The position numbers and the translations under genes were made by a program. A stretch of 64,000 nucleotides of DNA from Haplodiscus bocki (taxonomy: Eukaryota), in assembly GCA_965655095.1 (NCBI GenBank), contig OZ296658.1, positions 46,252,001-46,316,000 of the forward strand. The letters are read 5' to 3'. Shown piece by piece: positions 1,226 to 64,000 of the stretch. Within the stretch, counting starts at the first letter, position 1, and every line of letters starts with the position of its first letter. The notes beneath the pieces are model-generated. The model did no database searches, was not told the DNA's origin, and saw only the letters and a program-made list of their open reading frames with translations.

Positions 1226-1226
1226 A

Positions 1227-9370: not shown

Positions 9371-9725
9371 TAAATTTTTGTCAAGTTTTTTTTACAACTG
9401 TTTCCTATTATTTAAAAAAAGTAAACCACGCAGGGGGCAAAAGTGCTCCTTGAGCTACAATCAAAAATTTCTTACAACTAAAGCTCAAAGTGATCTCTAT
9501 AAATTACCAGAAGACAAATAGTTTTAACATAACATTTTTGCAAAGGTTGAAAATGAGCATAGAAGAAAACGACTTTTTGAGAAAAGACAAACAATTTGTA
9601 CAGGGTGCCTTTAAAGAAAACCTAAATGGATGGGAAATGGATGCCTACTCATTTTTAAAAACAACCCAAAAACAGAAATTCGATCAATTGTGGACATTTG
9701 TGTGTACTTTTTGCTACCTATGGCA
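9370..9725 (+). pseudogene. Adenain-like (clan CE) cysteine protease remnant (also ~1720-2050, ~4255-4612, ~6810-7150)
   Basis: PTHF*KQPKNRNSINCGHLCVLF at 9644-9712; copy 2 reads PTHNKEEHRNGNSIDCEHLCVFF. This fits the Q-x-x-x-x-S-x-x-CG-x-x-C catalytic-Cys motif. Upstream GQNC..ARSDGY may be decayed GxHW..FDSYG (weak). Confidence 0.55.
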
Positions 9726-9729
9726 ACAG

Positions 9730-10390: not shown

Positions 10391-10409
10391 CGTGTACAAT
10401 CAAGAAGCA

Positions 10410-11480: not shown

Positions 11481-11489
11481 ATCATAAAA

Positions 11490-12752: not shown

Positions 12753-12759
12753 CAAAACT

Positions 12760-13567: not shown

Positions 13568-13596
13568 CTAGCAACCTGAATACGTATTTCCTTCCC

Positions 13597-17513: not shown

Positions 17514-20085
17514 GCAAAAATTTCACGCTTGAATTACTTAGGTCAAAAAGTGGACGAATCCAGACTGACTGTAACAGCTGATTCCACCTTTCGCCCACGT
17601 CTTCCCTTTATGTATCATAAGACAAAAGGAATTGGATTTGTAGTATCATTGGATCAGCAAAATTTTACGCTTGAATTTTTCAGGGAAAAAAGTAAACGAA
17701 TCCGAACTGAGTGCAACAACCGATTGCACCCTTCGCCCATGTCGTCGCTTCATGTATCAAAATTCCAAAAGAATCGGATTCAGTGTTTTATTGAATAAGC
17801 AATTTTTTAATCTTGAGTTACTTAGGTAAAAGGTAAACGAATCGAGACTGACTGTAACAACCGATTTGACCTTCTCACATGTCTTCACTTTTTGTATGAA
17901 AATTCCAAAGGAATCGGATTTAGCGTCTCGATGGATAACCGTCTTTTACCCTTCAACTATTCAGAGCAAAAAAGAAATGAATCCAGACTGACTGTATTAA
18001 TCGATTGCACCCTCCGCCCAAGTCTTACTTTTAGGTATCAAAATTCAAAAGGAAACGAAATTAGTGTTTCATTGAGAAGGCGATATTTCACTCTTGAACT
18101 ACTTAGGGCAAAAACTAAACGATTCCGGACTGACTGTAACAACCGATTGCACCGTCCACGCATGTCTTCTTTTTTAAATCAAAGTTCAAGTTCAATGGAT
18201 TTAGTGTTTCATTGAATAAGCAATATTATACAATTGAATTACTTAAAGCAGATGTAAACGAATCCAGACTGACTGTAACAGCTGATTCCACCTTTCGCCG
18301 ACGTCTTCCCTTTATGTATCATAAGACAAAAGGAATTGGATTTGTAGTATCATTGGATCAGCAAAATTTTACGCTTGAATTTTTCAGGGAAAAAAGTAAA
18401 CGAATCCGAACTGAGTGTAACAACCGATTGCACCCTTTGCTCATGTCTTCTCTTAAATATCAGAATTCAATTGATTTGGACTTAGTGTTTCATTGAATAA
18501 GCAATAATTTACTCTTGAATTACTTACAGCAAAAGCAAACGAATCCAGACTGACTGTAACAACCGATTGCAACGTGTGCTCATGTTTTCTCTTCATGTAT
18601 CAAAATTCGAATTATTTGGAATTAGTGTTTCATTGAATAAGCAATATTTTACTCTTGAACTAATAGAGCAAAAGTAAACGAATCCAGACTGACTCTAGCA
18701 ACCGACTGCACCCATCGCCCATGTCTTCTGTTTCTGTATCAAAATTCAAAACAAATCGCTTTGGGTAATTCCTCGAAAAAGCAATATTTTATTCTTCAAA
18801 TACTTGAGGCAAAAAATAAACGAATCCAGACTGACTGTAACAACCTTTTGCACCCTTCGCCAATGTGTTCTCTCTTTGCATCAAAATTCAAAGGGAATCG
18901 GATTTAGTATTTCCTTGAATAGGCAATATTTTACTCCTGAATTACTTGGGGCAAAAAGTAAACAAATCCACACTGACTGTAACAGCTGATTCCACCTTTC
19001 GCCCACGTCTTCCCTTTATGTATCATAAGACAAAAGGAATTGGATTTGGAGTATCATTGGATCAGCAAAATTTTACGCTTGAATTTTTCAGGGAAAAAGG
19101 TAAACGAATCCAGACTGAGTGTAACATCCGATTGCACCCTTCTTCATGTATCAAAATTCCAAAAGAATCGGATTCAGTGTTTTATTGAATAAGCAATTTT
19201 TTACTCTTGAGTTACTTAGGTAAAAGTAAACGAATCGAGACTGACTGTAACAACCGATTTCACCTTCGCACATGTCTTCTCTTTTTGTATGAAAATTCTA
19301 TAGGAATCGGATTCAGTGCCTCGATGGATAACCACTCTTTTACCCTTCAACTATTCAGAGCAAAGAAGAATTGAATCCAGACTGACTGTAATATCCGATT
19401 GCACCCTCCGCCCAAGTCTTACTTTAATGTATCGAAAATTAAAAGCAATCGGATTTAAAGTTTCATTAGATAAGCAAAATTTTACTCCGGAAATAATTAG
19501 AGCAAAGTAAACGAGTACAGACTGACTGTAACAACCGATTGCACCCTTCGTCCATATCTTCCTCTCGTGTATCAAAAATCAAAAGGAATCGGATTTAGTA
19601 TTTCATTGAATAGGCAAAATTTCACTAATGAATTACTTAGAGCAGAAGTGAACGAATCCAGACTGAGTGTAACAGCCGATTGCACCTTTCGCCCACGTCA
19701 TCCCTTTATGTATCATACGACAAAAGGAATTGGTTTTAGAGTATCATTGGATTAGCAAAATTTTACGCTTGAAATTTTCAGGGAAAAAAGTAAACGAATC
19801 CGAACTGAGTGTACCAACCGATTGCACCCTTCGCTCATGTCTTCTCTTTAAGTATCAGATATCAAATGATTTTGACTTAGTGTTTCATTGAATAAGCAAT
19901 CTTTTACTCTCGAAGTACTTACAGCAAAAGCAAACGAATGCAGACTGACTGTAACAACCGATTGCAACGTGTGCTCATGTTTTCTCTTCATGTATTAAAA
20001 TGCGAATTATTTGGAATTAGTGCTTCATTGAATAAGCAATATTTTACTCTTGAACTACTAGAGCAAAAGTAAACGAATCCAAATG
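17514..20085 (+). repeat. Satellite HOR domain: ~10-mer (~1400 bp) built from two related 5-mers
   Basis: TGTATCATA(A/C)GACAAAAGG at 17611, 18315, 19019 and 19709 (spacings 704, 704, 690). Alternate 5-mers are most alike (1408 and 1394 bp apart). Confidence 0.75.
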
Positions 20086-21694
20086 AACGATTCCAGAGTG
20101 ACTGTAAAAACCGATTGCACTCTTCACCATGTCGTTTCTTTATGCATCAAAATTCAAAAGGATTCCGATTTAGTACTTCCTTGAAAAAGCAATAAAGTAC
20201 TCTTGAATTACTTAGGGCAAAAATTGACGAATCCCGGCTGACTGTTACAACCGATTGCACCCTTCGCCCATGTCTTCTCCATATGTATCAAACTTCAAAA
20301 TGAATCGGATTTAGTGTTTCCTTGAATAAGCAAACTTTTACTCTTGAATTACTTAGGGCAAAAAAGAAACGAATCCAGACTGACTACATCAGCCGATTGC
20401 ACCCTTCGCCCATTTTTCCTCTTTATGTATCAAAAGTCAAAAGGAACCAGATTTAGTGTTTCATTGAATAAGCAATATTTCTCTCTTGAATTACTTGGGG
20501 CAAAAAGTAAACGAATGCAGACTGACTCTAACAACCGATTGCACCCTTCATCCATGTCCTCTCTTTTTGCATCAAGATTCAAAAGGAATCGGATTTAGTA
20601 ATACCTTGAATGGGCAATGTTTTACTCCTGAATTACTTGGGGCAAAAGGTGGACAAATCCAGACTGACTGTAACAGCTGATTCCACCTTTCGCCCACGTC
20701 TTCCCTTTATGTATCATAAGACAAAAGGAATTGGATTTGGAGTATCATTGGATCAGCAAAATTTTACGCTTGGATTTTTCAGGGGAAAAAGTAAACGAAT
20801 CCAGACTGAGTGTAACAACCGGTTGCAACCTTCGCCCATGTCGTCGCTTCATGTATCAAAATTCCAAAAGAATCGGATTCAGTGTTTTATTGAATAAGCA
20901 TTATTTTACTATTGAATTACTCAGAGCAGAAGTGAACGAATCCAGACTGACTGTAACAGCCGACTGCACCCTTCGCCCATGTCTTCCCTTGATGTATCAA
21001 AAATCAAAGGGAATCGGATTTAGTGTTTCCTTGATTAAGCAATATTTTAATATTGAAATACTTAGAGCAGAAGTAAACGAATCCAGACTGACTGTAACAG
21101 CCGCTTGCACCCTTCGACCATGTCTTCCCTTTATGTATCAAAATTCAAAAAGGTTTGGATTTATAGTATCATTGGATCAGCAATTATTTACGCCTGAATA
21201 ACTAAAAGCAAAAGTAAACGAATCCAGACTGACTGTAACAACCGATTGCACCCTTCGCCCATGTGTTCCTTTTACGTAACAAAATTCAAAAGGAATTGGA
21301 TTTAGAGTATCATTGGATCAGCAATATTTCAGGCTTGAGTTACTTAGAGCAAGAGTAAACGAACCCCGACAGACTGTTACAAGCGATTGCAACCTTCGCC
21401 CATGTCTTCTTTCAAAGTATCAAAATTCAAAAGATTTGGATTTAGTGTTTCATTGAAAAGGCGATAATTTACTCTTGAATTAGTTAGACCAAACGTAAAA
21501 AACCTCGACTGACTGTAACCGTCGACTGCACCCTTCGACCATATCTTCCCTTTATGTATCAAAATTTGAGAAGATTTGGAATTTTAGTATCCTTGGATCA
21601 GCAATTAGTTATGCCTGAATAACTAAAAGCAAAAGTAAACGAATCCAGACTGACTGTAGCAACTGATTGCAACCTTCGCCCATGTTTTTTCCAT

Positions 21695-24600
21695 GTATCA
21701 AAAATCGAAAAGAAATGCAATGAGTGTTGCATTGAATAAGAATGATTTTACTCTTGAATTACTTAGGGCGAAAATTAAATGATTCCAAACTGACTGTGAC
21801 GAACATTCGCAACCTTCGCACGTGTCTTCGCTTTTGCATCAAAATTCGAACGGAATCGGCTTTTGTGTCTCCTTCATTAAGCAATATTTTCTCTGGAATT
21901 ACTTAAGGCAAAAAAGAAACGAATCAAGACTGACTGTGACAACCGATTGCACCCTTCGACCATGTCTTCCCTTGATGTATCGAAAATCAAAAAGAATCGA
22001 ATTTAGTGTTTCCTTGAATAAGCAGTATTTTACTATTGAATTACTTAGAGCAGAAGTAAACGAATCCAGACTGACTGTAACAGCCGATTGCACCCTTCGA
22101 CCATGTCTTCCCTTTATGTATCAAATTTGAAAAGGAATTGGATTTAGAGTATCATTAGATCAGCAATATTTCAGGCTTGAGTTACTTAGAGCAAGAGTAA
22201 ACGAACCCCGACAGACTGTTACAAGCGATTGCAACCATCGCCCATGTCTTTTTTCAAAGTATCAAAATTCAAAAGATTTGGATTTAGTTTTTCATTGAAA
22301 CAGCAATACGTTCTCTTCAATTACTAAGTGCTGAAAGTAAACGATTCCAGATTGACTGTAACAATCTTTTGCATGCATCGCCCGTGTCTTCTCTTCAGGT
22401 ATCAAAAATCAAAATGAATCGGAATTAGTGTTTCATTGAAAAGGCAAATATTAACACTTGAATTACTTAGCGCAAAAAGTAAACGAGTCAAAACTGACTG
22501 TAACCACCGACTGCACCCTTCACCCATGTCTTCTCTTTAAGTATCAAAATTCAAAAAGAAATTCAATTAGGGTTTCATTGAAGAGGGATGCTTTTACTCT
22601 TGAATTACTTAGGACAAACAGAAATTGAATCCAGACCGACGGTACCAACCGATTGAACCCTTCATCTTTGTCTTCTCTTTATGTATCAAAACGCAAAAGG
22701 AATGGCATTAATAATTCATTGAATAAGCAATATTTTACTCTTCACTTACTTAGGGCAAAAAGTAAACGAATCCCGTTCGATTGTAACAACCGATTGCACC
22801 CTTCGCCCATGTCTTCCCCTAAAGCATCAAAATTCAAAACGAATCGGATTAAGTAATTCATTGAATAAGCAATGTTTTACTCCTTAATTACTTAGGGCAG
22901 AAAGTAAACGAATCTAGACTGACTGTAACAACCTTTTGCATCCATCGCCCGTGTCTTCTCTCCATGCATCAAAATCAAAAACAATCGGATTCAGTGTTTC
23001 CTTGAATAGGCAATATATTACTCTTGAATTTCTTAGGGCAAAAAATAAACGACACTCCGGTTAATTGTAAGAGCTGATTGCACCCTTCGCCAATGTCTTC
23101 TCTTCATGTATCAAAACTCAAAAGGAATGGGAATTAGTGTTTCATTGAAAAGGCAATATTTTACGCTTGAAATACTAATGGCAAAAGTAAGCGAGTCCAA
23201 ATTGACTGTAACCACCGAGTGCAACCTTCGCCTATGTCTTCTCCTAATGTATCAAAAATCAAAAAGAATTGCAATAAGTGTTTCATTGAATAAGAATGAT
23301 TTTACTCTTGAATTACTTAGGGCAAAAATTAAACGAATCCAGACTGACTGTAACAACCGATTGCACCCTTCACCCATGTCTTCTCTTTATGTATCAAAAT
23401 TCAAATGGAATCGGCTTTTGTGTTCCATTGAATAAGTAAAATTTTACACTTGAACTCCTTATGGCAAAAGTAAAGGAGTGCAAATTGACTGTAACCACCG
23501 GGTGCAACCTTCGCCCATGTCTTCTCCTAATGTATCAACAATCGAAAAGAATTGCAATGAGTGTTTCATTGAATAAGAATGATTTTACTCTTGAATTACT
23601 TAGGGCAAAAAGTAAACGATTCCAAACTGACTGTGACCAACTTTAGCAACCTTCGCACGTGTCTTCTTTTTGCATCAAAATTCAAATGGAATCGGCTTTT
23701 GTGTCTCCTTGAATAAGCAATATTTTCTCTTGAATTACTTAAGGCAAAAAAGAAACGAATCAAGACTGACTGTGACAACCGATTGCACCCTTCGACCATG
23801 TCTTCCCTTGATGTATCGAAAATCAAAAAGAATCGAATTTAGTGTTTCCTTGAACAAGCAGTATTTTACTATTGAATTACTTAGAGCAGAAGTAAACGAA
23901 TCCAGACTGACTGTAACAGCCGATTGCACCCTTCGACCATGTCTTCCCTTTATGTATCAAATTTGAAAAGGAATTGGATTTAGAGTATCATTAGATCAGC
24001 AATATTTCAGGCTTGAGTTACTTAGAGCAAGAGTAAACGAACCCCGACAGACTGTTACAAGCGATTGCAACCATCGCCCATGTCTTTTTTCAAAGTATCA
24101 AAATTCAAAAGATTTGGATTTAGTTTTTCATTGAAACAGCAATACGTTCTCTTCAATTACTAAGTGCTGAAAGTAAACGATTCCAGATTGACTGTAACAA
24201 TCTTTTGCATGCATCGCCCGTGTCTTCTCTTCAGGTATCAAAAATCAAAATGAATCGGAATTAGTGTTTCATTGAAAAGGCAAATATTAACACTTGAATT
24301 ACTTAGCGCAAAAAGTAAACGAGTCAAAACTGACTGTAACCACCGACTGCACCCTTCACCCATGTCTTCTCTTTAAGTATCAAAATTCAAAAAGAAATTC
24401 AATTAGGGTTTCATTGAAGAGGGATGCTTTTACTCTTGAATTACTTAGGACAAACAGAAATTGAATCCAGACCGACGGTACCAACCGATTGAACCCTTCA
24501 TCTTTGTCTTCTCTTTATGTATCAAAACGCAAAAGGAATGGCATTAATAATTCATTGAATAAGCAATATTTTACTCTTCACTTACTTAGGGCAAAAAGTA

Positions 24601-27075
24601 AACGAATCCCGTTCGATTGTAACAACCGATTGCACCCTTCGCCCATGTCTTCCCCTAAAGCATCAAAATTCAAAACGAATCGGATTGAGTAATTCATTGA
24701 ATAAGCAATGTTTTACTCCTTAATTACTTAGGGCAGAAAGTAAACGAATCTAGACTGACTGTAACAACCTTTTGCATCCATCGCCCGTGTCTTCTCTCCA
24801 TGCATCAAAATCAAAAACAATCGGATTCAGTGTTTCCTTGAATAGGCAATATATTACTCTTGAATTTCTTAGGGCAAAAAATAAACGACACTCCGGTTAA
24901 TTGTAAGAGCTGATTGCACCCTTCGCCAATGTCTTCTCTTCATGTATCAAAACTCAAAAGGAATGGGAATTAGTGTTTCATTGAAAAGGCAATATTTTAC
25001 GCTTGAAATACTAATGGCAAAAGTAAGCGAGTCCAAATTGACTGTAACCACCGAGTGCAACCTTCGCCCATGTCTTCTCCTAAAGTATCAAAAATCAAAA
25101 AGAATTGCAATAAGTGTTTCATTGAATAAGAATGATTTTACTCTTGAATTACTTAGGGCAAAAATTAAACGAATCCAGACTGACTGTAACAACCGATTGC
25201 ACCCTTCACCCATGTCTTCTCTTTATGTATCAAAATTCAAATGGAATCGGCTTTTGTGTTCCATTGAATAAGTAAAATTTTACACTTGAACTCCTTATGC
25301 CAAAAGTAAAGCAGTGCAAATTGACTGTAACCACCGGGTGCAACCTTCGCCCATGTCTTCTCCTAATGTATCAACAATCGAAAAGAATTGCAATGAGTGT
25401 TTCATTGAATAAGAATGATTTTACTCTTGAATTACTTAGGGCAAAAAGTAAACGATTCCAAACTGACTGTGACCAACTTTAGCAACCTTCGCACGTGTCT
25501 TCCTTTTGCATCAAAATTCAAATGGAATCGGCTTTTGTGTCTCCTTGAATAAGCAATATTTTCTCTTGAATTACTTAAGGCAAAAAAGAAATGAATCAAG
25601 ACTGACTGTGACAACCGATTGCACCCTCCGACCATGTCTTCCCTTGATGTATCGAAAATCAAAAAGAATCGAATTTAGTGTTTCCTTGAACAAGCAGTAT
25701 TTTACTATTGAATTACTTAGAGCAGAAGTAAACGAATCCAGACTGACTGTAACAGCCGATTGCACCCTTCGACCATGTCTTCCCTTTATGTATCAAATTT
25801 GAAAAGGAATTGGATTTAGAGTATCATTAGATCAGCAGTATTTCAGGCTTGAGTTACTTAGAGCAAGAGTAAACGAACCCCGACAGACTGTTACAAGCGA
25901 TTGCAACCTTCGCCTATGTCTTTTTTCAAAGTATCAAAATTCAAAAATTTGGATTTAGTTTTTCATTGAAACAGCAATACGTTCTCTTCAATTACTAAGT
26001 GCTGAAAGTAAACGATTCCAGATTGACTGTAACAATCTTTTGCATGCATCGCCCGTGTCTTCTCTTCAGGTATCAAAAATCAAAATGAATGGGAATTAGT
26101 GTTTCATTGAAAAGGCAAATATTAACACTTGAATTACTTAGCGCAAAAAGTAAACGAGTCAAAACTGACTGTAACCACCGACTGCACCCTTCACCCATGT
26201 CTTCTCTTTAAGTATCAAAATTCAAAAAGAAATTCAATTAGGGTTTCATTGAAAAGGGATGCTTTTACTCTTGAATTACTTAGGACAAACAGAAATTGAA
26301 TCCAGACCGACGGTACCAACCGATTGAACCCTTCATCTTTGTCTTCTCTTTATGTATCAAAACGCAAAAGGAATGGCATTAATAATTCATTGAATAAGCA
26401 ATATTTTACTCTTCACTTACTTAGGGCAAAAAGTAAACGAATCCCGTTCGATTGTAACAACCGGTTGCACCCTTCGCCCGTGTCTTCCCCTAAAGTATCA
26501 AAATTCAAAACGAATCGGATTAAGTAATTCATTGAATAAGCAATGTTTTACTCCTTAATTACTTAGGGCAGAAAGTAAACGAATCTAGACTGACTGTAAC
26601 AACCTTTTGCATCCATCGCCCGTGTCTTCTCTCTATGCATCAAAATCAAAAACAATCGGATTCAGTGTTTCCTTGAATAGGCAATATAATACTCTTGAAT
26701 TTCTTAGGGCAAAAAATAAACGACACTCCAGTTAATTGTTAATTGTAAGAGCTGATTGCACCCTTCGCCAATGTCTTCTCTTCATGTATCAAAACTCAAA
26801 AGGAATGGGAATTAGTGTTTCATTGAAAACGCAATATTTTACGCTTGAAATACTTATGGCAAAAGTAAACGAGTCCAAATTGACTGTAACCACCGAGTGC
26901 AACTTTCGCCCATGTCTTCTCCTAATGTATCAAAAATCAAAAGAATTGCAATAAGTGTTTCATTGAATAAGAATGACTTTACTCTTAAAATACTAAGGGC
27001 AAAATGTAAACGAATCCAGACTGACTGTAACAACCGATTGCACCCTTCACCCATGTCTTCTCTTTATGTATCAAA
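21695..27075 (+). repeat. Satellite HOR domain: 13-mer (1835-1836 bp), ~2.9 near-identical copies
   Basis: Near-identical pseudo-ORFs at 22653/24489/26324, 23106/24942, 23461/25297 and 21899/23735/25571. Confidence 0.95.
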
Positions 27076-27479
27076 AATCAAAAAGATTTGGATTTATAGT
27101 TTCATTGGATCAGCAATTATTTACCCCCAAAGAACCAAAAGCAAAATTAAACGAATTCAGACTGACTGTAACAACCGATTGCACCCTTCGACCATGTCTT
27201 CCCTTTATGTATCAAAATTCAAAAAGATTTGGATTTATAGTTTCATTGGATCAGCAATTATTTACCCCCAAAGAACCAAAAGCAAACTTAAACGAATCCA
27301 GACTGACTGTAACAACCGATTGCACCCTTCGCCCATATCTTCCTTTAACGTATCAAAAATTCAAAAGGAATTGGATTTAGAGCATCATTGGATCAGCAAT
27401 ATTTCAGGCTTGAGTTACTTAGAGCAAGAGTAAACGAACCCCGACTGACTGTTACAAGCGATTGCAACCTTCGCCCATG

Positions 27480-30160
27480 TCTTCTTTCAATGTATCAAAA
27501 ATCAAAAGATTCTGGTTTAGTGTTTCATTGAATAGGCGATATTTTACTCTTGAATTAATTAGACCAAACGTAAAAAATCTCGACTTACTGTAACCGTCGA
27601 TTGCACCCTTCGATCATATCTTCCCTTTATGTATCAAAATTCAAGATAATTTGGATTTATAGTATCATTGGATCAGCAATGATCTACGCCTGAATAACTA
27701 AAAGCAAAAGTAAACGAAACCAGACTGACTGCAACAACTGATTGCACCCTTCGCCCATATCGTATTTTTATGTATAAAAATTCAAGTGATTTGGATTTAG
27801 TGTTTCCTTAAATAGGCAAAATATTATTTTTAAATTACTTAGAGAAAAAGTAAACGAATCCAGACTGACTGTAGCAACGGATTGCAACCTTCGCCCATGT
27901 TTCTTCTTCATGTATCAAAATTCAAAGGAGTTGGATTCACTGTTTCCTTGAATGGGCGATATTTTATTCTTGAATTACGTAGGGCGAAAAGTAAACGAAT
28001 CCAGACTGACTGTAACAACTGATTGCACCCTTCGCCCAAGTCTTCCTTTTTTTAACAATTTTCAAAAGGAATGGGAAATAGAGTTTCATTGAATAAGCAA
28101 TATTTCTTACATGAATTACTTAGGGCAAAAAATAAACGATTCCAGACCGACTGTAACAACCAATTGCACCGTTCGCCCGTGTCTTCTCTTTTTGCATCAA
28201 GATTCAAAAGGAATCGGATTGAGTGTTTGCTTGAATAAGCAATTTTTTACTCTTGAAGTACTCAGGGCAAAAAAAAAGGAAACCGTTATGACTGTAACCA
28301 CCGATTGCACCCTTCGCCCATGCCTTCTCCATATAGATCAAATTTCAAAATGAATCGGATTTAGTGTTTTCTTGAATAAGCAAACTTTTACTCTTGACTT
28401 ACTTAGGGCAAAAAAGAAACGAATCCAGACTGACTACATCAACCGATTGCACCCTTCGCCCATTTTTTCTCTTTATGTATCAAAAGTCAGAAGGAACCAG
28501 ATTTAGTGTTTCATTGAATAAGCAATATTTCTCTCTTGAATTACTTGGGGCAAAAAGTGAACTAATGCAGGTTGACTGTATCAACCTACTGCACCCTTCA
28601 TCCATGTCTTCTTTCAATGTATCAAAAATCAAAAGATTTGGGTTTAGTGTTTCATTGAATAGGCGATATTTTACTGTTGAATTAGTTAGACCAAACGTAA
28701 AAAAAATCGACTGACTGTAACCGCCGATTGCACCCTTCGACCATATCTTCCCTTTATGTATCAAAAATCAAGATGATCTGGATTGATAGTATCATTGGAT
28801 CAGCAATTATTTACGCTTGAATAACTAAAAGCAAAAGTAAACGAAACCAGACTGACTGCAACAACTGATTGCACCCTTCGCCCATGTCGTATTTTTATGT
28901 ATAAAAATTCAAGCGATTTGGATTTAGTGTTTCATTAAATAGGCAATATATTATTTTTAAATTACTTAGAGAAAAAAATAAACGAATCCAGACTGACTGT
29001 AGCAAGGGATTGCAACCTTCGCCCATGTTTCTTCTTCATGTATCAAAATTCAAAGAAGTTGGATTCACTGTTTCCTTGAATGGGCGATATTTTATTCTTG
29101 AATTACGTAGGGCGAAAAGTAAACGAATCCAGACTGACTGTAACAACTGATTGCACCCTTCGCCCAAGTCTTCCTTTTTTTAACAATTATCAAAAGGAAT
29201 GGGAAATAGAGTTTCATTGAATAAGCAATATTTCTTACATGAATTACTTAGGGCAAAAAATAAACGATTCCAGACCGACTGTAACAACCAATTGCACCGT
29301 TCGCCCGTGTCTTCTCTTTTTGCATCAAGATTCAAAAGGAATCGGATTGAGTGTTTGCTTGAATAAGCAATTTTTTACTCTTGAAGTACTCAGGGCAAAA
29401 AAAAAGGAAACCGTTATGACTGTAACCACCGATTGCACCCTTCGCCCATGCCTTCTCCATATAGATCAAAATTCAAAATGAATCGGATTTAGTGTTTTCT
29501 TGAATAAGCAAACTTTTACTCTTGACTTACTTAGGGCAAAAAAGAAACGAATCCAGACTGACTACATCAACCGATTGCACCCTTCGCCCATTTTTTCTCT
29601 TTATGTATCAAAAGTCAAAAGGAACCAGATTTAGTGTTTCATTGAATAAGCAATATTTCTCTCTTGAATTACTTGGGGCAAAAAGTGAACTAATGCAGGT
29701 TGACTGTATCAACCTACTGCACCCTTCATCCATGTCTTCTTTCAATGTATCAAAAATCAAAAGATTTGGGTTTAGTGTTTCGTTGAATAGGCGATATTTT
29801 ACTGTTGAATTAGTTAGACCAAACGTAAAAAAAATCGACTGACTGTAACCGCCGATTGCACCCTTCGACCATATCTTCCCTTTATGTATCAAAAATCAAG
29901 ATGATTTGGATTGATAGTATCATTGGATCAGCAATTATTTACGCTTGAATAACTAAAAGCAAAAGTAAACGAAACCAGACTGACTGCAACAACTGATTGC
30001 ACCCTTCGCCCATGTCGTATTTTTATGTATAAAAATTCATGCGATTTGGATTCAGTGTTTCATTAAATAGGCAATATATTATTTTTAAATTACTTAGAGA
30101 AAAAGTAAACGAATCCAGACTGACTGTAGCAACGGATTGCAACCTTCGCCCATGTTTTCT
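27480..30160 (+). repeat. Satellite HOR domain: 8-mer (1128 bp), ~2.4 copies
   Basis: Pseudo-ORF pairs 28111/29239, 28394/29522 and 28480/29608; CTTCTTTCAATGTATC at ~27481, 28608 and 29736. Confidence 0.92.
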
Positions 30161-53049: not shown

Positions 53050-56000
53050 ATTTACTCTTGAATTACTTAGGGCGAAAAAGAAACGATTCCAGATTGACTG
53101 TAACAAACGATTGCACCCTTCGCCCATGTCTTCGCTTAATATGTCAAATTTCAAAAGGAATCGGTTTTACTGTTTCATTGAAAAAGCAATATTTTATTCC
53201 TGAATTACTCAGTCAAACAGTAAACGAATCCAGACTGACTGCAACAAACGATTGCACACTTCGCCCATGACTTCTCTTCATGTATCAAAATTCAAAATGA
53301 TTGGGATTCAGTGTTTCATTGAAGAAGCAAAATTTTACTCTTGAGTTACTTAAATCGAAAAGTAAACGAATCCACACTGACTGTAACAATGGGTTGCACC
53401 CATTGCCCATGTCTTCTTTATGTGTCAAAATTCGAAAGGAATCGGATTTAGTGTTTCAATAAACATGGAATTTTTTTTCTTGGCTTACTGAAGGCAAACA
53501 GTAAAGGATTCTTTTCGGACTGTAACAACCAATTGCACCCTTCGCCCATGTCTTCTCTTTATGCATCAAAATTCAAAAGGTATGGGATTTAGTGTTTCCT
53601 TGAACAAGCAAAAATTCACTCTTGAATTACTTAGAGCAAAAATGAAACGAATCCAATCTGACTGTAAGAACCGTTTGCACCTTTCGCCCATGTCTTCTCT
53701 TTATGTATCAAAATCGAAAGGGAATGGGAATTAGTGTTTCATTGGATAGGCATTTTTTTACTCTTGAAGTACTTAGAGCAAAAAGTAACCGAATCCAGAC
53801 TGACTGTAACAACCGATTGCACTCTTGGCCCATGTCTTTTCTTTATGTATCGAAATTCAAAATGAATGGGGTTTAGTGTTTCATTGAACAAGCATTATTT
53901 TCTCTTGAATTACTTAGGGCAAAAATTATAAAAATCCAGACTGTCTGTAACAATTGATTGCTCCTTTTGTCTATTTCTTCTATTTGTGTATCGAAATTCA
54001 AACGGAATCGGATTCAGTGTGTCATTGAATAAACAATATTTTACCCTTGAGTTACTCAGGGCAAAAAGTGGACAAATCCACATTGACTGCAACAACCGAT
54101 TTCACACTTCGCCCACCTCTTCTTTTTTTGTATCAAAATTCAAAACAAATGGGGTTTAGTGTTTCATTGAAAAAACAATAATTCACTCTTGAACTTCTTA
54201 GGGCAAAAGGTACACGATTCCAGAGTGACAGTAACAACCGATTTCACACTTCGACCTTGTCTTCTCTTTATGTATCAAATTTCAAAAAGAAAGGGAAATA
54301 GTGATTCAATGAACAAGCAAGATTTTACTTTTGAAATACTTAGGGCAAAAAAGAAACGAATCCAGACTGACTGTAACAATTGCACCTTTCGCCTATGTCT
54401 TCTCTTTATGTATAAAATTCAAATGTATGGGATTTAGTGTTTCATTGATTAAACAGTATTTTACTTTTGAATTCATTACGGCAAAAACGAAATGATTCCG
54501 TTGAGACTGTAACAACCGTTTGCACCTTTCGCCCATGTCTTCTCTTTTTGTATCAAACTTCAAAAGGATTGGGATTGAGTGCTTCATTGAAAAAACATTA
54601 TTTTACCCTTGAATTACTCAGTCATACACTAAACGAATCCAAACTGACTGTAACAAACGATTGCACCCTTCGCCCATGTCTTCTCTTTATGCATCAAAAT
54701 TCAAAACGAACCGGATATAGTGTTTCCTTGAATAAGCAAAACTTCACCCTCGATCTATATAGACCAAATTTAATCAAGTCCAGATCGACAGGAACAACCC
54801 ACTGCACCCTTCGCCCATGTCTTCTCTTTATGCATCAAAATTCAAAACGAACCGGATATAGTGTTTCCTTGAATAAGCAAAACTTCACCCTCGATCTATA
54901 TAGACCAAATTTAATCAAGTCCAGATCGACAGGAACAACCCACTGCACCCTTCGCCCATGTCTTCTCTTTTTGTATCAAAATCAAAAGAATCAAATTTCG
55001 TGTTTCATTGAATAAGCAAAATTTTACTCTTGAACCACTTAGGGCAAAAGCAGGCAAATCCAGACTGTCTGTAACAATCGATGGCTCCTTTCGCCCATGT
55101 CTTCTCTTTATGCATCAAAATTCAAAAGGTATGGGATTTAGTGTTTCCTTGAACAAGCAAAAATTCACTCTTGAATTACTTAGAGCAAAAATGAAACGAA
55201 TCCAATCTGACTGTAAGAACCGTTTGCACCTTTCGCCCATGTCTTCTCTTTATGTATCAAAATCGAAAGGGAATGGGAATTAGTGTTTCATTGGATAGGC
55301 ATTTTTTTACTCTTGAAGTACTTAGAGCAAAAACTAACCGAATCCAGACTGACTGTAACAACCGATTGCACTCTTGGCCCATGTCTTTTCTTTATGTATC
55401 GAAATTCAAAATGAATGGGGTTTAGTGTTTCATTGAACAAGCATTATTTTCTCTTGAATTACTTAGGGCAATAATTATAAAAATCCAGACTGTCTGTAAC
55501 AATTGATTGCTCCTTTTGTCTATTTCTTCTATTTGTGTATCGAAATTCAAACGGAATCGGATTCAGTGTGTCATTGAATAAACAATATTTTACCCTTGAG
55601 TTACTCAGGGCAAAAAGTGGACAAATCCACATTGACTGCAACAACCGATTTCACACTTCGCCCACCTCTTCTTTTTTTGTATCAAAATTCAAAACAAATG
55701 GGGTTTAGTGTTTCATTGAAAAAACAATAATTCACTCTTGAACTTCTTAGGGCAAAAGGTACACGATTCCAGAGTGACAGTAACAACCGATTTCACACTT
55801 CGACCTTGTCTTCTCTTTATGTATCAAATTTCAAAAAGAAAGGGAAATAGTGATTCAATGAACAAGCAAGATTTTACTTTTGAAATACTTAGGGCAAAAA
55901 AGAAACGAATCCAGACTGACTGTAACAATTGCACCTTTCGCCTATGTCTTCTCTTTATGTATAAAATTCAAAAGGTATGGGATTTAGTGTTTCATTGATT

Positions 56001-59000
56001 AAACAGTATTTTACTTTTGAATTCATTACGGCAAAAACGAAATGATTCCGTTGAGACTGTAACAACCGTTTGCACCTTTCGCCCATGTCTTCTCTTTTTG
56101 TATCAAACTTCAAAAGGATTGGGATTGAGTGCTTCATTGAAAAAACATTATTTTACCCTTGAATTACTCAGTCAAACACTAAACGAATCCAAACTGACTG
56201 TAACAAACGATTGCACCCTTCGCCCATGTCTTCTCTTTTTGTATCAAAATCAAAAGAATCAAATTTCGTGTTTCATTGAATAAGCAAAATTTTACTCTTG
56301 AACCACTTAGGGCAAAAGCAGGCAAATCCAGACTGTCTGTAACAATCGATGGCTCCTTTCGCCCATTTCTTCTATTTATGTATCAAAATTCAAAAGGATT
56401 GGGATTGAGTGTTTCAGTGAATTTGCAATATTTTTTTCTTGAAATACTTAGGGCAAACAGTCAATGAATCTTTTCTGACTGTAACAACCAATTGCACCCT
56501 TCGCCCATGTCTTCTCTTTATGTATCAAAGTCGAAAGGGAATGGGAATTAGTGTTTCATTGGATAGGCATTTTTTTACTCTTGAAGTACTTAGAGCAAAA
56601 AGTAACCGAATCCAGACTGACTGTAACAACCGATTGCACTCTTGGCCCATGTCTTTTCTTTATGTATCGAAATTCAAAAAGAATGGGGTTTAGTGTTTCA
56701 TTGAACAAGCATTATTTTCTCTTGAATTACTTAGGGCAATAATTATAAAAATCCAGACTGTCTGTAACAATTGATTGCTCCTTTTGTCTATTTCTTCTAT
56801 TTGTGTATCGAAAATCAAACGGAATCGGATTCAGTGTGTCATTGAATAAACAATATTTTACCCTTGAGTTACTCAGGGCAAAAAGTGGACAAATCCACAT
56901 TGACTGCAACAACCGATTTCACACTTCGCCCACCTCTTCTTTTTTTGTATCAAAATTCAAAACAAATGGGGTTTAGTGTTTCATTGAAAAAACAATAATT
57001 CACTCTTGAACTTCTTAGGGCAAAAGGTACACGATTCCAGAGTGACAGTAACAACCGATTTCACACTTCGACCATCTCTTCTCTTTATGTATCAAATTTC
57101 AAAAGGAAAGGGAATTAGTGATTCAATGAACAAGCAAGATTTTACTTTTGGAATACTTAGGGCAAAAAAGAAACGAATCCAGACTGACTGTAACAATTGC
57201 ACCTTTCGCCTATGTCTTCTCTTTATGTATAAAATTCAAAAGGTATGGGATTTAGTGTTTCATTGATTAAACAGTATTTTACTTTTGAATTCATTACGGA
57301 AAAAACGAAAAGATTCCGTTGAGACTGTAACAACCGTTTGCACCTTTCGCCCATGTCTTCTCTTTTTGTATCAAACTTCAAAAGGATTGGGATTGAGTGC
57401 TTCATTGAAAAAACATTATTTTACCCTTGAATTACTCAGTCAAACACTAAACGAATCCAAACTGACTTTGACAACCGATTGCACCTTTCGCCCATGTCTT
57501 CTCTTTATGTATCAAAGTCGAAAGGGAATGGGAATTAGTGTTTCATTGGATAGGCATTTTTTTACTCTTGAAGTACTTAGAGCAAAAAGTAACCGAATCC
57601 AGACTGACTGTAACAACCGATTGCACTCTTGGCCCATGTCTTTTCTTTATGTATCGAAATTCAAAATGAATGGGGTTTAGTGTTTCATTGAACAAGCATT
57701 ATTTTCTCTTGAAATACTTAGGGCAATAATTATAAAAATCCAGACTGTCTGTAACAATTGATTGCTCCTTTTGTCTATTTCTTCTATTTGTGTATCGAAA
57801 TTCAAACGGAATCGGATTCAGTGTGTCATTGAATAAACAATATTTTACCCTTGAGTTACTCAGGGCAAAAAGTGGACAAATCCACATTGACTGCAACAAC
57901 CGATTTCACACTTCGCCCACCTCTTCTTTTTTTGTATCAAAATTCAAAACAAATGGGGTTTAGTGTTTCATTGAAAAAACAATAATTCACTCTTGAACTT
58001 CTTAGGGCAAAAGGTACACGATTCCAGAGTGACAGTAACAACCGATTTCACACTTCGACCATGTCTTCTCTTTATGTATCAAATTTCAAAAAGAAAGGGA
58101 AATAGTGATTCAATGAACAAGCAAGATTTTACTTTTGAAATACTTAGGGCAAAAAAGAAACGAATCCAGACTGACTGTAACAATTGCACCTTTCGCCCAT
58201 GTCTTCTCTTTTTGTATCAAACTTCAAAAGGATTGGGATTGAGTGCTTCATTGAAAAAACATTATTTTACCCTTGAATTACTCAGTCAAACACTAAACGA
58301 ATCCAAACTGACTGTAACAAACGATTGCACCCTTCGCCCATGTCTTCTCTTTATGCATCAAAATTCAAAACGAACCGGATATAGTGTTTCCTTGAATAAG
58401 CAAAACTTCACCCTCGATCTATATAGACAAAATTTAATCAAGTCCAGATCGACAGGAACAACCCACTGCACCCTTCGCCCATGTCTTCTCTTTTTGTATC
58501 AAAATCGAAAGAATCAAATTTCGTGTTCCATTGAATAAGCAAAATTTTACTCTTGAAGCACTTAGGGCAAAAGCAGGCAAATCCAGACTGTCTGTAACAA
58601 TCGATGGCTCCTTTCGCCCATTTCTTCTATTTATGTATCAAAATTCAAAAGGATTGGGATTGAGTGTTTCAGTGAATTTGCAATATTTTTTTCTTGAAAT
58701 ACTTAAGGCAAACAGTCAATGAATCTTTTCTGACTGTAACAACCAATTGCACCCTTCGCCCATGTCTTCTCTTTATGTATCAAAGTCGAAAGGGAATGGG
58801 AATTAGTGTTTCATTGGATAGGCATTTTTTTACTCTTGAAGTACTTAGAGCAAAAAGTAACCGAATCCAGACTGACTGTAACAACCGATTGCACTCTTGG
58901 CCCATGTCTTTTCTTTATGTATCGAAATTCAAAAAGAATGGGGTTTAGTGTTTCATTGAACAAGCATTATTTTCTCTTGAATTACTTAGGGCAATAATTA

Positions 59001-62000
59001 TAAAAATCCAGACTGTCTGTAACAATTGATTGCTCCTTTTGTCTATTTCTTCTATTTGTGTATCGAAAATCAAACGGAATCGGATTCAGTGTGTCATTGA
59101 ATAAACAATATTTTACCCTTGAGTTACTCAGGGCAAAAAGTGGACAAATCCACATTGACTGCAACAACCGATTTCACACTTCGCCCACCTCTTCTTTTTT
59201 TGTATCAAAATTCAAAACAAATGGGGTTTAGTGTTTCATTGAAAAAACAATAATTCACTCTTGAACTTCTTAGGGCAAAAGGTACACGATTCCAGAGTGA
59301 CAGTAACAACCGATTTCACACTTCGACCATCTCTTCTCTTTATGTATCAAATTTCAAAAGGAAAGGGAATTAGTGATTCAATGAACAAGCAAGATTTTAC
59401 TTTTGAAATACTTAGGGCAAAAAAGAAACGAATCCAGACTGACTGTAACAATTGCACTTTTCGCCTATGTCTTCTCTTTATGTATAAAATTCAAAAGGTA
59501 TGGGATTTAGTGTTTCATTGACTAAACAGTATTTTACTTTTGAATTGATTACGGCAAAAACGAAATGATTCCATTGAGACTGTAACAACCGTTTGCACCT
59601 TTCGCCCATGTCTTCTCTTTTTGTATCAAACTTCAAAAGGATTGGGATTGAGTGCTTCATTGAAAAAACATTATTTTACCCTTGAATTACTCAGTCAAAC
59701 ACTAAACGAATCCAAACTGACTTTGACAACCGATTGCAACCTTCGGCTTTATCTTCGCTTTATATATCAAAAATGAAAAAGAATGGGAATCAGTGTTTCG
59801 TTGAAAAAGCAATATTTACCTTGGACTTACTTAGGGCAAAAAGTAAACAAACCCAGACTGACAGTAACAACCGATTGCAACATTTGTCTCCTCTTTATGT
59901 GTCGAAATTCAAAATGAATCGGATTTAGTGTTTCATTGAATAAGCCTTATTTCACTCTTGAATAACATGGAGCAAGAGTAAACGAAATCAAGACCGACTG
60001 TAACAACCGGTTTTACCCTTCGCCATGTCTTCTCTTTATGTATCAACATTCATATGAATGGGATTTACTGTTTCCTTGAGAAAGCAAACCTTTCCTCTTG
60101 AATTACTCAGAGCAAAAGTAAACGAATCCAGACACTGTAACAACCGATTGCACCCTTCGCCCAGGTCGTCTCTTTTTGTATCAGAATTCAAATAGAATCA
60201 GATTTGGTTTTCGATTGAATAAGCAGAACTTTACTCTTGAATTACTTGGGGCAAAAAGTAAACGATTCTAGACTGGCAGTGACAACCCATTGCACCATTT
60301 TTTCCTCTTTAAGTGTTGAACTTCAAAAGGAATCGGATTTACTGTTTCATTGAAAAAGCAATATTTTATTCCTGAATTACTCAGTCAAACAGTAAACGAA
60401 TCCAGACTGACTGCAACAAACGATTGCACACTTCGCCCATGTCTTCTCTTTATGCATCAAAATTCAAAAGGAACCGGATATAGTGTTTCCTTGAATAAGC
60501 AAAACTTCAACCTCGATCTATTTAGACCAAATTTAATCAAGTCCAGATCGACAGGAACAACCCACTGCACCCTTCGCCCATGTCTTCTCTTTTTGTATCA
60601 AAATCAAAAGAATCAGATTTCGTGTTTCATTGAATAAGCAAAATTTTACTGTTGAACCACTTAGGGCAAAAGCAGGCAAATCCAGACTGTCTGTAACAAT
60701 CGATTGCTCCTTTCGCCCATTTCTTCTATTTATGTATCAAAATTCAAAAGGATTGGGATTGAGTGTTTCATTGAATTTGCAATATTTTTTTCTTGAAATA
60801 CTTAGGGCAAACAGTTAATGAATCTTTTCTGACTGTAACAACCAATTGCACCCTTCGCCCATGTCTTCTCTTTATGTATCAAAATCGAAAGGGAATGGAA
60901 ATTAGTGTGTCATTGAATAAACAATATTTTACCCTTGAGTTACTCAGGGCAAAAAGTGGACAAATCCACATTGACTGCAACAACCGATTTCACACTTCGC
61001 CCACCTCTTCTTTTTTTGTATCAAAATTCAAAACAAATGGGGTTTAGTGTTTCATTGAAAAAACAATAATTCGCTCTTGAACTTCTTAGGGCAAAAGGTA
61101 CACGATTCCAGAGTGACAGTAACAACCGATTTCACACTTCGACCATCTCTTCTCTTTATGTATCAAATTTCAAAAGGAAAGGGAATTAGTGATTCAATGA
61201 ACAAGCAAGATTTTACTTTTGAAATACTTAGGGCAAAAAAGAAACGAATCCAGACTGACTGTAACAATTGCACCTTTCGCCTATGTCTTCTCTTTATGTA
61301 TAAAATTCAAAAGGTATGGGATTTAGTGTTTCATTGACTAAACAGTATTTTACTTTTGAATTGATTACGGCAAAAACGAAATGATTCCATTGAGACTGTA
61401 ACAACCGTTTGCACCTTTCGCCCATGTCTTCTCCTTTTGTATCAAACTTCAAAAGGATTGGGATTGAGTGCTTCATCGAAAAAACATTATTTTAACCTTG
61501 AATTACTCAGTCAAACACTAAACGAATCCAAACTGACTTTGACAACCGATTGCACCCTTCGGCTTTATCTTCGCTTTATGTATCAAAAATGAAAAAGAAT
61601 GGGAATCAGTGTTTCGTTGAAAAAGCAATATTTACCTGGGACTTACTTAGGGCAAAAAGTAAACAAACCCAGACTGACAGTAACAACCGATTGCACCATT
61701 TGTCTCCTCTTTATGTGTCAAAATTCAAAATGAATCGGATTTAGTGTTTCATTGAATAAGCCTTATTTCACTCTTGAATAACATGGAGCAAGAGTAAACG
61801 AAATCAAGACCGACTGTAACAACCGGTTTTACCCTTCGCCATGTCTTCTCTTTATGTATCAACATTCATATGAATGGGATTTACTGTTTCCTTGAGAAAG
61901 CAAACCTTTCCTCTTGAATTACTCAGAGCAAAAGTAAACGAATCCAGACACTGTAACAACCGATTGCACCCTTCGCCCAGGTCGTCTCTTTTTGTATCAG

Positions 62001-64000
62001 AATTCAAATAGAATCAGATTTGGTTTTCGATTGAATAAGCAGAACTTTACTCTTGAATTACTTGGGGCAAAAAGTAAACGATTCTAGACTGGCAGTGACA
62101 ACCCATTGCACCATTTTTTTCTCTTTAAGTGTTGAACTTCAAAAGGAATCGGATTTACTGTTTCATTGAAAAAGCAATATTTTATTCCTGAATTACTCAG
62201 TCAAACAGTAAACGAATCCAGACTGACTGCAACAAACGATTGCACACTTCGCCCATGACTTCTCTTCATGTATCAAATTTCAAAAGGATTGGGATTCAGT
62301 GTTTCATTGAAGAAGCAATATTTTACTCTTGAGTTACTTAAATCGAAAAGTAAACGAATCCACACTGACTGTAACAACGGGTTGCACCCATTGCCGATGT
62401 CTTCCTTTATGTGTCAAAATTCGAAAGGAATCGGATTTAGTGTTTCAATAAACATGCAAATTTTTTTCTTGGATTACTTGGGGCAAACAGTAAACGAATC
62501 TTTTCTGACTGTAACCACCAATTGCACCCTTCGCCCATGTCTTCTCTTTATGTATCGAAATTCAAAATGAATGGGGTTTAGTGTTTCATTGAACAAGCAT
62601 TATTTTCTCTTGAATTACTTAGGGCAATAATTATAAAAGTTTAGACTGTCTGTAACAATTGATTGCTCCCTTTGTCTATTTCTTCTATTTGTGTATCGAA
62701 ATTCAAACGGAATCGGATTCAGTGTGTCATTGAATAAACAATATTTTACCCTTGAGTGACTCAGGGCAAAAAGTGGACAATTCCACCTTGACTGCAACAA
62801 TCGATTTCACACTTCGCCCACCTCTTCTTTTTTTGTATCAAAATTCAAAACAAATGGGGTTTAGTGTTTCATTGAAAAAACATTAATTCACTCTTGAACT
62901 TCTTAGGGCAAAAGGTACACGATTCCAGAGTGACAGTAACAGCCGATTTTGCCTTTGTCTGCTCTTCTTGTGTCAAAATTCAAAAGGAATCGGATTTAGT
63001 GTTTCATCGAATTTGCAATATTATTTTTTGAATTACTTAGGGCAAACAGTAAACAAATCTTTTCTGTCTGTAACAAACAATTGCACCCCTCGCCCATGTC
63101 TTACCTTTATGTATCAAAATTCAAAAGGTATGGGATTTAGTGTTTCCTTGAACAAGCACAAATTGACTCCTGAATTACTTAGTGCAAAAATGAAACGAAT
63201 CCATTCTGACTGTAACAACCGTTTGCACCTTTCGCCCATATCTTTTGTTTATGTATCAAAATCGAAAGGGAGTGGGAATTAGTGTTTCATTGGATAGGCA
63301 TTTTTTTACTCTTGAAGTACTTAGAGCAAAAAGTAACCGAATCCAGACTGACTGTAACAACCGATTGCACTCTTGGCCCATGTCTTCTCTTTATGTATCG
63401 AAAATCAAAATGAATGGGGTTTAGTGTTTCATTGAACAAGCATTATTTTCTCTTGAATTACTTAGGGCAATAATTATAAAAGTTTAGACTGTCTGTAACA
63501 ATTGATTGCTCCCTTTGTCTATTTCTTCTATTTGTGTATCGAAATTCAAACGGAATCGGATTCAGTGTGTCATTGAATAAACAATATTTTACCCTTGAGT
63601 GACTCAGGGCAAAAAGTGGACAATTCCACCTTGACTGCAACAACCGATTTCACACTTCGCCCACCTCTTCTTTTTTTGTATCAAAATTCAAAACAAATGG
63701 GGTTTAGTGTTTCATTGAAAAAACATTAATTCACTCTTGAACTTCTTAGGGCAAAAGGTACACGATTCCAGAGTGACAGTAACAGCCGATTTTGCCTTTG
63801 TCTGCTCTTCTTGTGTCAAAATTCAAAAGGAATCGGATTTAGTGTTTCATCGAATTTGCAATATTATTTTTTGAATTACTTAGGGCAAACAGTAAACAAA
63901 TCTTTTCTGTCTGTAACAAACAATTGCACCCCTCGCCCATGTCTTACCTTTATGTATCAAAATTCAAAAGGTATGGGATTTAGTGTTTCCTTGAACAAGC
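53050..64000 (+). repeat. Satellite domain with variable-length HORs (11-, 9-, 7-, 9-, 13-, 13-, 6-mer)
   Basis: Marker GGGCAA(A/T)AATTATAAAA at 53917, 55466, 56734, 57721, 58989, 62622 and 63465 (spacings 1549, 1268, 987, 1268, 3633, 843). 1816-bp repeat at 59261/61077 and 59734/61550. Confidence 0.9.

What the first reader, a model, noticed from the sequence alone, without database searches (positions are those of the whole stretch)
17514..64000. Candidate centromeric 142-bp satellite with layered, alpha-satellite-like higher-order structure
Seen: >46 kb of head-to-tail monomers with no inversion or TE insertion that I could find. Neighbouring monomers are clearly diverged, while blocks 6-31 monomers apart are near-identical, and the HOR period changes by domain (10, 13, 8, 8+, 7/31, 7, 11/9/7/13/6). 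Established: roughly nucleosome-sized monomers with HORs typify centromeric satellites. Inference: an apparently uncharacterised (peri)centromeric satellite in which HORs arise locally but reach only 2-3 copies before being replaced.
Basis: partly seen in the sequence, partly recalled or inferred. Interest (0 to 1): 0.7.

Follow-up and report, generated by a model that had tools for sequence, protein, structure and literature searches.

The report
Single-locus 142-bp satellite array
This is a real 49-kb block of non-coding 142-base tandem repeats, re-copied locally in blocks of several units, but it occurs at only one place in a 1.5-Gb animal (probably acoel worm) genome, and nothing found here shows that it acts as a centromere.

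Summary
The array holds about 350 head-to-tail 142-bp monomers, all on the + strand, with no inversion or transposon insertion. It runs from window 17514 past the window end to G000:C11:46,318,887, about 49.4 kb in total.

- **Two age layers.** Monomers are about 73.5% identical whether adjacent or far apart.
- **Not an artefact.** A second assembly record of the same organism matches 20.6 kb of the array, apart from one homopolymer base. Its contig depth (74x) matches its neighbours (68x, 78x).
- **Single locus.** Four genome-wide searches, down to about 72% identity, find the repeat only at this locus. It is therefore not a satellite shared by all centromeres.
- **Centromere role untested.** The array lies at 50.4% of a 91.8-Mb scaffold, in a neighbourhood rich in repeats and transposons. 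It is small, shows no excess of dyad symmetry, and has a host gene 94 kb away.
- **Other origins rejected.** No coding, RNA-gene or transposon origin was found.
- **Seen before.** The scan has already noted many similar layered, locus-specific satellites elsewhere in this genome.
- **Extra finding.** Breakpoints of the young duplications cluster in the middle third of the monomer.

Verdict: an ordinary, previously undescribed, locus-specific satellite.

The parts
17514..64000 (+). Window part of the 142-bp satellite array. The whole array is C11:46,269,520-46,318,887 and ends at L001:2887 in a truncated monomer.
   Evidence: TRF; HMM tiling, all + strand and uninterrupted.
17367..17510 (+). 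Left junction. The last 144 bp of unique flank has one 73% non-coding paralogue at C11:59,524,565. The homology stops where the array starts.
17514..21667 (+). Old left-edge domain. Best partners are only about 90% identical, mostly at an offset of 10 monomers.
21668..27076 (+). 13-monomer block (1,835 bp) in 2.94 copies, 98.5-98.8% identical.
   Evidence: Reproduced in the ENA contig.
27475..30157 (+). 8-monomer block (1,127 bp) in 2.38 copies, about 98-99% identical.
30157..32498 (+). Second 8-monomer block (1,173 bp) in 2.0 copies, 98.9% identical. Each copy holds a 183-bp variant monomer, at about 30930-31111 and 32103-32285. A third such variant lies at about 34412-34593.
36445..42384 (+). 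Mosaic domain. Short runs of 3-7 monomers are repeated at offsets of 11, 13, 15, 25, 26 and 28 monomers, at 94-98% identity.
42206..49354 (+). Older 31-monomer duplication (95.5% identity, lag 4,372 bp). It holds nested 5-monomer blocks and a younger 7-monomer block in 2.3 copies at 43806-46090.
53541..62257 (+). Youngest, interrelated blocks at offsets of 11, 9, 7, 16 and 13 monomers, 98-99.6% identical.
62533..64000 (+). 6-monomer block (843 bp) in 3.2 copies. It runs on to L001:1245. The last ~10 monomers before the right edge are old (best partner 83%).

Best explanation
This is a locus-specific, non-coding satellite, most likely in an acoel genome.

An old array of roughly 100 monomers of 142 bp diverged without homogenisation. 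Pairwise distance between monomers is about 0.33 substitutions per site, and there is no decay with distance along the array.

The array then roughly tripled to 350 monomers, about 49 kb. It did so through a series of local duplications in monomer register, of 5 to 31 monomers each, with distances of 0.004-0.046.

The likely mechanism is unequal sister-chromatid or homologue exchange, or replication template switching between misaligned monomers. Exchanges seem to favour the pyrimidine-rich middle third of the monomer. Array edges take part least and so stay oldest.

I see no sequence-encoded function, and I read it as neutral or selfish tandem DNA, probably packaged as heterochromatin.

- **Shown:** the anatomy, the two age classes, the single-locus distribution, the non-coding nature and the normal read depth.
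- **Inferred:** the exchange mechanism, the breakpoint preference and the lack of function.
For: - **Anatomy and identity layers:**
  - 113 clusters at 90% identity among 350 monomers.
  - 122 monomers have a partner at 99% or more.
  - Identity to the consensus is flat at about 0.85 along the array.
  - Edge monomers have the weakest partners (0.90 at the left, 0.83 at the right).
- **No decay with distance** once recent copies are removed: 0.734 for adjacent monomers, 0.727 at more than 160 monomers apart.
- **Single locus:**
  - 42 of 42 exact 20-mer hits lie in this array.
  - A 33-mer with up to 3 mismatches gives 127 hits genome-wide, equal to the local count.
  - A 39-mer from another part of the monomer gives 54 of 54 hits here.
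  - BLAST of one edge monomer gives 93 matches down to 72% identity, all here.
- **Non-coding:**
  - no Rfam family and no tRNA;
  - no codon periodicity, and stops in all frames across a three-monomer read;
  - only sub-threshold, inconsistent Pfam noise.
- **Not transposon-derived by the tests run:** no monomer-like sequence within 100 kb on either side, and no homology between the two flanks.
- **Assembly:** the ENA contig ctg81241 matches 20,612 bp of the array except for one homopolymer base. Its name gives 74.5x, against 68.2x and 78.3x for neighbouring contigs.
- **Breakpoints:** 16 of 20 boundaries of the ten youngest events fall at consensus positions 55-100. A simulation with uniform breakpoints and the same estimator gives about 31%.
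Against: - The array lies at 50.4% of a 91.8-Mb scaffold.
- It sits in a cluster of other tandem arrays and mobile elements:
  - a 13-kb array of 708-bp units 45 kb upstream;
  - a 2.55-kb macrosatellite in window 1-9965;
  - a Polinton-like element;
  - an LTR retroelement.
  This context is compatible with a centromere.
- Site-to-site conservation is four times more uneven than binomial. This could reflect a bound factor, or only shared ancestry.
- There is no transposon insertion in 49 kb of a transposon-rich genome. This hints at ongoing turnover or selection.
- The phase window for the breakpoint clustering was chosen after seeing the data, and the events number only about ten.
- Function cannot be excluded from sequence alone.
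Confidence: 0.72

Rival explanations
1. The array is the functional centromere, or its core, of this one chromosome. Each chromosome of the species would then carry its own private satellite.
For: - Mid-scaffold position, at 50.4%.
- A 142-bp monomer close to nucleosome core size, and low-copy higher-order-like blocks.
- A neighbourhood rich in repeats and mobile elements, with four assembly gaps within 264 kb.
- Uneven conservation along the monomer.
- Earlier scan notes report different satellites on other scaffolds.
Against: - Only about 49 kb on a 92-Mb chromosome, at ordinary depth.
- Family unique to one locus.
- No homogenised many-copy higher-order core. The largest block has 3.2 copies.
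- No excess dyad symmetry: fold z-scores run from +0.5 to +1.6.
- A host gene (ARL2BP) lies 94 kb away.
- Scan notes report many similar arrays in this genome, one of them 28.7 Mb away on this same scaffold and several inside introns. The prior for any one array is therefore low (second-hand).
Confidence: 0.12
2. The array grew from an internal or terminal tandem repeat of a mobile element, for example the neighbouring Polinton/Maverick-like remnant, as reported for other arrays in this genome.
For: - Scan notes describe arrays grown from Maverick ends elsewhere in this genome.
- Window 1-14800 is noted as Polinton-like.
- A Polinton-like capsid and integrase lie 100 kb to the left, and an LTR element 9 kb to the right.
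Against: - No monomer-like sequence anywhere else in the genome, or within 100 kb on either side. A multi-copy element should have left solo copies.
- No terminal inverted or direct repeats bracket the array.
- 2.7 kb of unrelated sequence lies between the noted viral remnant and the array.
Confidence: 0.07
3. The block copies are assembly artefacts, or the array is a collapsed stand-in for a much larger satellite.
For: - Some blocks are 99.2-99.6% identical.
- The region is scaffolded from contigs of 50-125 kb.
Against: - Copies differ by 0.4-4.5%. They are not identical.
- A second assembly record agrees over 20.6 kb, including the 13-monomer and 8-monomer blocks.
- Contig depth is 74x, against 68x and 78x for neighbours.
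- Unique flanks lie on both sides within one contig.
Confidence: 0.03
4. The array is a run of decayed coding repeats or small-RNA genes.
For: - One frame of the consensus is open across a whole monomer.
- Runs of 141-bp monomers give stop-free stretches of 170-194 codons on the + strand only.
- This genome does hold tRNA and snoRNA arrays, according to scan notes.
Against: - The modal length of 142 bp is not a multiple of three.
- Conservation shows no three-base periodicity.
- Pfam gives only noise.
- No Rfam or tRNA match.
- A protein word search found only ORFs from this same contig.
Confidence: 0.02

Closest known systems
Primate alpha satellite (171-bp monomers in higher-order repeats)
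   Same: - Head-to-tail monomers of roughly nucleosome size that differ by about 25-30%.
- Multi-monomer units copied in register.
- Older, more diverged monomers at the array edges.
- Exchange breakpoints that appear non-random within the monomer. That alpha satellite shows this is my own recollection, not checked here.
   Different: - Alpha satellite higher-order repeats reach hundreds to thousands of copies over megabases, at 95-100% identity, on every chromosome, and they bind CENP-A.
- Here the blocks reach 1.6-3.2 copies, the whole array is 49 kb, and it is a single locus genome-wide.
- No binding data exist here, and no CENP-B-box-like element or dyad symmetry was found.
Locus-specific satellites and macrosatellites shaped by unequal crossing-over (Smith 1976 model; my own knowledge)
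   Same: - A single locus and non-coding sequence.
- Local in-register duplications.
- Edges that escape exchange.
- Block ages that vary by domain.
   Different: - Base-layer divergence is unusually high (about 26%), with almost no homogenisation.
- About two thirds of the present length comes from recent low-copy block duplications.
Other layered satellites noted by this scan in the same genome (monomers of about 175, 180, 525, 979, 1063, 1130 and 1530 bp)
   Same: Arrays of the same size class (30-120 kb), with the same layered build and the same single-locus habit, according to the earlier notes.
   Different: - The monomer here is unrelated to any other sequence in the genome.
- No transposon, virus or gene origin was found for this one.
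- I did not examine those other loci myself.

Membership tests
Centromeric satellite (alpha-satellite-like) | Long head-to-tail array of monomers of about nucleosome size | tested here: met
   350 monomers of 142 bp, all on the + strand.
Centromeric satellite (alpha-satellite-like) | Homogenised higher-order repeat core with many copies | tested here: not met
   Blocks reach only 1.6-3.2 copies. There is no dominant period across the array.
Centromeric satellite (alpha-satellite-like) | Family present at the centromere of all or most chromosomes | tested here: not met
   All pattern and BLAST matches in 1.5 Gb fall in this one locus.
Centromeric satellite (alpha-satellite-like) | Bound by CENH3/CENP-A, or lies at the primary constriction | not testable with these tools
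   No ChIP, FISH or Hi-C data. The only hint is the position at 50.4% of the scaffold.
Centromeric satellite (alpha-satellite-like) | CENP-B-box-like motif or enriched dyad symmetry / non-B DNA | tested here: not met
   Six monomers fold no better than shuffled sequence, z = +0.5 to +1.6. A binding motif cannot be ruled out, because site conservation is uneven.
Generic locus-specific satellite DNA | Non-coding tandem repeat at one locus, with no gene or transposon homology | tested here: met
Transposon-derived satellite | Monomer homologous to part of a dispersed element | tested here: not met
   No copy outside the array. A weak, ancient origin cannot be excluded: the profile search scored only the top 150 of its candidates.
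Tandem RNA-gene array (tRNA, snoRNA, 5S) | Monomer matches an RNA family | tested here: not met
   No Rfam match at E <= 1, and no tRNA.

The most novel reading that the evidence does not exclude
The 49-kb array is the centromere of this chromosome. Acoel chromosomes would each carry a small private satellite as centromere, turning over through short-lived 2-3-copy blocks. This would be the first centromere sequence described for Xenacoelomorpha.
Probability: 0.1. Interest if true: 0.6.

Novelty: new member of a known kind. Interest (0 to 1): 0.25.

Why it matters
As it stands, this is one more undescribed, species-specific satellite in a genome that seems full of them, so it is ordinary.

It has some value as a clean, fully assembled example of an array that expands by low-copy block duplication without homogenisation. 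It also hints at a preferred exchange zone inside the monomer. Both could inform models of satellite turnover.

It would matter more if CENH3 mapping placed the centromere here. In the paper library searched I found nothing on centromeres or satellites of acoels.

Tried and rejected
- **Genome-wide DNA search with four monomers:** not scored because there were too many candidates.
- **Sequence-only covariance model R1 against the genome:** only the top 150 of about 732,000 rough candidates were scored, and all lie in the array. This says nothing about weak copies elsewhere.
- **Dimer structure suggested by TRF's 283-bp row:** rejected. Offset-2 identity (0.739) equals offset-1 identity (0.738).
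- **Second locus at C11:59.52 Mb:** not a satellite. It is a 144-bp non-coding paralogue of the left flank.
- **CpG decay as a sign of methylation:** CpG observed/expected is 0.88 in the array and 0.73-0.82 in the flanks. Consensus CpG sites are only slightly less conserved, so this is uninformative.
- **Pfam on 20 flank ORFs without hits:** nothing learned.
The claim that such arrays are common in this genome therefore rests on earlier scan notes only.
- **Presence in the related species (ENA ERZ25074608):** could not be tested directly. The only hint is that the protein word search with an array ORF returned no ORFs from it.
Full report
**1. The observation**

TRF finds a single array at 17520-64000 with period 142, 329 copies and 72% matches. 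The window holds no N.

A profile HMM built from the monomers tiles the stretch with 332 hits, all on the + strand. No gap exceeds 19 bp and there is no foreign insert. The only oddities are three 183-bp variant monomers that carry a short internal duplication.

The window is G000:C11:46,252,001-46,316,000, on a 91.8-Mb scaffold of a 1.50-Gb assembly. The array runs 2,887 bp further into L001 and ends in a truncated monomer. The whole array is therefore C11:46,269,520-46,318,887. That is about 49.4 kb and 350 monomers.

The left edge is sharp. Homology of the flank to its one paralogue stops at window 17510, and monomer sequence begins at about 17514.

**2. Internal structure**

Mean pairwise identity between monomers is 0.735, and 0.738 for neighbours. 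Once recent copies are set aside there is almost no decay with distance: 0.734 for adjacent monomers and 0.727 beyond 160 monomers. Identity to the consensus is flat at about 0.85 along the array. The base layer is therefore old, with a distance of about 0.33, and is not homogenised.

Blocks of 5 to 31 monomers recur on top of this layer at whole-monomer offsets:

| Block | Copies | Identity | Window coordinates |
|---|---|---|---|
| 10 monomers | – | about 90% | 17.5-21.7 kb |
| 13 monomers | 2.94 | 98.5% | 21668-27076 |
| 8 monomers | 2.38 | about 98-99% | 27475-30157 |
| 8 monomers | 2.0 | 98.9% | 30157-32498 |
| mosaic of short runs | – | 94-98% | 36.4-42.4 kb |
| 31-monomer duplication, with nested 5- and 7-monomer blocks | 1.6 | 95.5% | 42206-49354 |
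| interrelated 11, 9, 7, 16 and 13 monomers | – | 98-99.6% | 53.5-62.3 kb |
| 6 monomers | 3.2 | 98-98.5% | from 62533 |

Clustering at 90% identity leaves 113 groups. About two thirds of today's length therefore comes from recent block copying. The left 30 monomers and the last 10 monomers have the weakest partners, at 0.90 and 0.83. This is what is expected if exchange is rarest at array ends.

**3. Is it an artefact?**

A protein word search with an array ORF returned ORFs from a 97,112-bp ENA contig. That contig, ERZ26859043:ctg81241, covers window 20530-41140. It differs from the window by one homopolymer base in 20,612 bp, so the 13-monomer and 8-monomer blocks are reproduced.

I take the figure in each contig name to be assembler read depth. 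It is 74.5x for this contig. The neighbouring contigs give 68.2x and 78.3x, and a more distant one, probably a single haplotype, gives 36.2x. This leaves no sign of large-scale collapse. Both records probably derive from the same reads, so this check is not fully independent.

**4. Distribution**

All four genome-wide searches point to a single locus:

- An exact 20-mer from the conserved core occurs 42 times in 1.5 Gb, every time in this array.
- A 33-mer with up to 3 mismatches gives 127 hits, exactly the number I count locally.
- A 39-mer from another part of the monomer gives 54 hits, all here.
- BLAST with one diverged edge monomer gives 93 matches down to 72% identity, all here.

About a third of the array's own monomers pass the 33-mer test. 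A second array of the same family would therefore have been seen.

**5. What it is not**

- It is not an RNA gene array. There is no Rfam family at E <= 1 and no tRNA.
- It is not coding.
  - One frame of the consensus is open across a monomer, which explains stop-free runs of 170-194 codons where 141-bp monomers follow each other.
  - The modal length is 142 bp, conservation shows no three-base periodicity, and Pfam gives only noise.
- It shows no transposon origin. No monomer-like sequence lies within 100 kb on either side, and the two flanks share nothing that could be terminal repeats.
- It shows no excess of dyad symmetry.

**6. Surroundings**

Within 264 kb I found the following:

- a 13-kb array of 708-bp units and small arrays of 172-179-bp units, 40-57 kb to the left;
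- a 2.55-kb macrosatellite at window 1-9965, 71-76% identical between copies;
- a Polinton-like capsid and integrase about 100 kb to the left, and an LTR retroelement with gag, protease, reverse transcriptase, RNase H and integrase 9 kb to the right;
- four 200-N gaps;
- a complete single-exon ARL2BP gene 94 kb to the right.

The best named full-length relative of that ARL2BP protein is from the acoel Convolutriloba macropyga, at 55% identity. The host is therefore most likely an acoel. This agrees with some earlier scan notes and not with those that say coral.

**7. Centromere or not?**

For a centromere:

- the array centre lies at 50.4% of the scaffold;
- the monomer is near nucleosome core length;
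- the neighbourhood is rich in repeats.

Against a centromere:

- the small size and normal depth;
- the single locus;
- the lack of a homogenised core;
- the lack of dyad symmetry;
- the nearby host gene;
- the many comparable layered arrays in this genome that earlier scan notes describe, including a 60-kb tRNA array on this same scaffold and arrays inside introns.

I put a private centromere at about 0.1. Papers searched hold nothing on acoel centromeres or satellites.

**8. Mechanism**

All block offsets are whole numbers of monomers. This fits unequal exchange or template switching between misaligned monomers.

I mapped breakpoints by a maximum-likelihood change-point on block alignments. 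For the ten youngest events, 16 of 20 boundaries fall at consensus positions 55-100, the pyrimidine-rich middle of the monomer. Left boundaries of five independent tandem events fall at positions 59-78.

I then simulated uniform breakpoints on arrays built from real monomers. The estimator has a median error of 2 bp and puts 30-33% of boundaries in positions 55-100. The nominal binomial P is 1e-5 for the ten youngest events and 0.009 for all 32 boundaries.

The phase window was chosen after seeing the data, and older events do not follow it. I therefore treat this as suggestive only.

**9. Verdict**

It does not hold for 'centromeric'. This is a new member of a known kind and of low interest, unless CENH3 mapping says otherwise.

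Noticed in passing
window 1-9965: At least four tandem copies of a unit of about 2.55 kb, 71-76% identical (self-BLAST). The scan has already noted this as a macrosatellite made from Polinton-like genes. The ORFs I tried from it gave no Pfam hit.
   Followed up: partly
C11:46,212,308-46,225,258 (L012-L013) and 46,228,182-46,229,337 (L013): A separate 13-kb array of units of about 708 bp (77% matches) and small arrays of 172-179-bp units, 40-57 kb left of the 142-bp array. They are unrelated to it by HMM.
   Followed up: partly
L007:1947-9616 (C11:46.164-46.172 Mb): A cluster of long ORFs in 27% GC DNA. It includes a double-jelly-roll capsid-like protein (416 aa) and an rve integrase (285 aa). 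This is a Polinton/Maverick-like element.
   Followed up: no
L015:1867-8329 (-) (C11:46,327,867-46,334,329): An LTR retroelement with four long ORFs: gag (DUF1759), protease, RT with RNase H, and integrase. It lies in 46% GC DNA, 9 kb right of the array.
   Followed up: no
L023:6769-7506 (+) (C11:46,412,769): An intact single-exon ARL2BP (BART domain) gene of 245 aa. The closest named relative is from Convolutriloba macropyga (55% identity). Relatives at 82-83% identity occur in a different ENA sample, ERZ25074608, which is evidently a related acoel.
   Followed up: partly
window 17367-17510 and L003:5565-5705: The last 144 bp before the array has a single 73% non-coding paralogue 13 Mb away on the same scaffold. 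The homology ends where the array begins.
   Followed up: partly
L001:3185-3661 (C11:46,319,185-46,319,661): The right flank carries two short dispersed repeats, of about 125 bp and about 250 bp. Copies at 70-87% identity occur on at least 12 large scaffolds.
   Followed up: no
ENA ERZ26859043 contig names: Neighbouring contigs show about 68-78x depth, but the 283-kb ARL2BP contig shows 36x. This suggests that the stretch is haplotype-resolved in that assembly.
   Followed up: no
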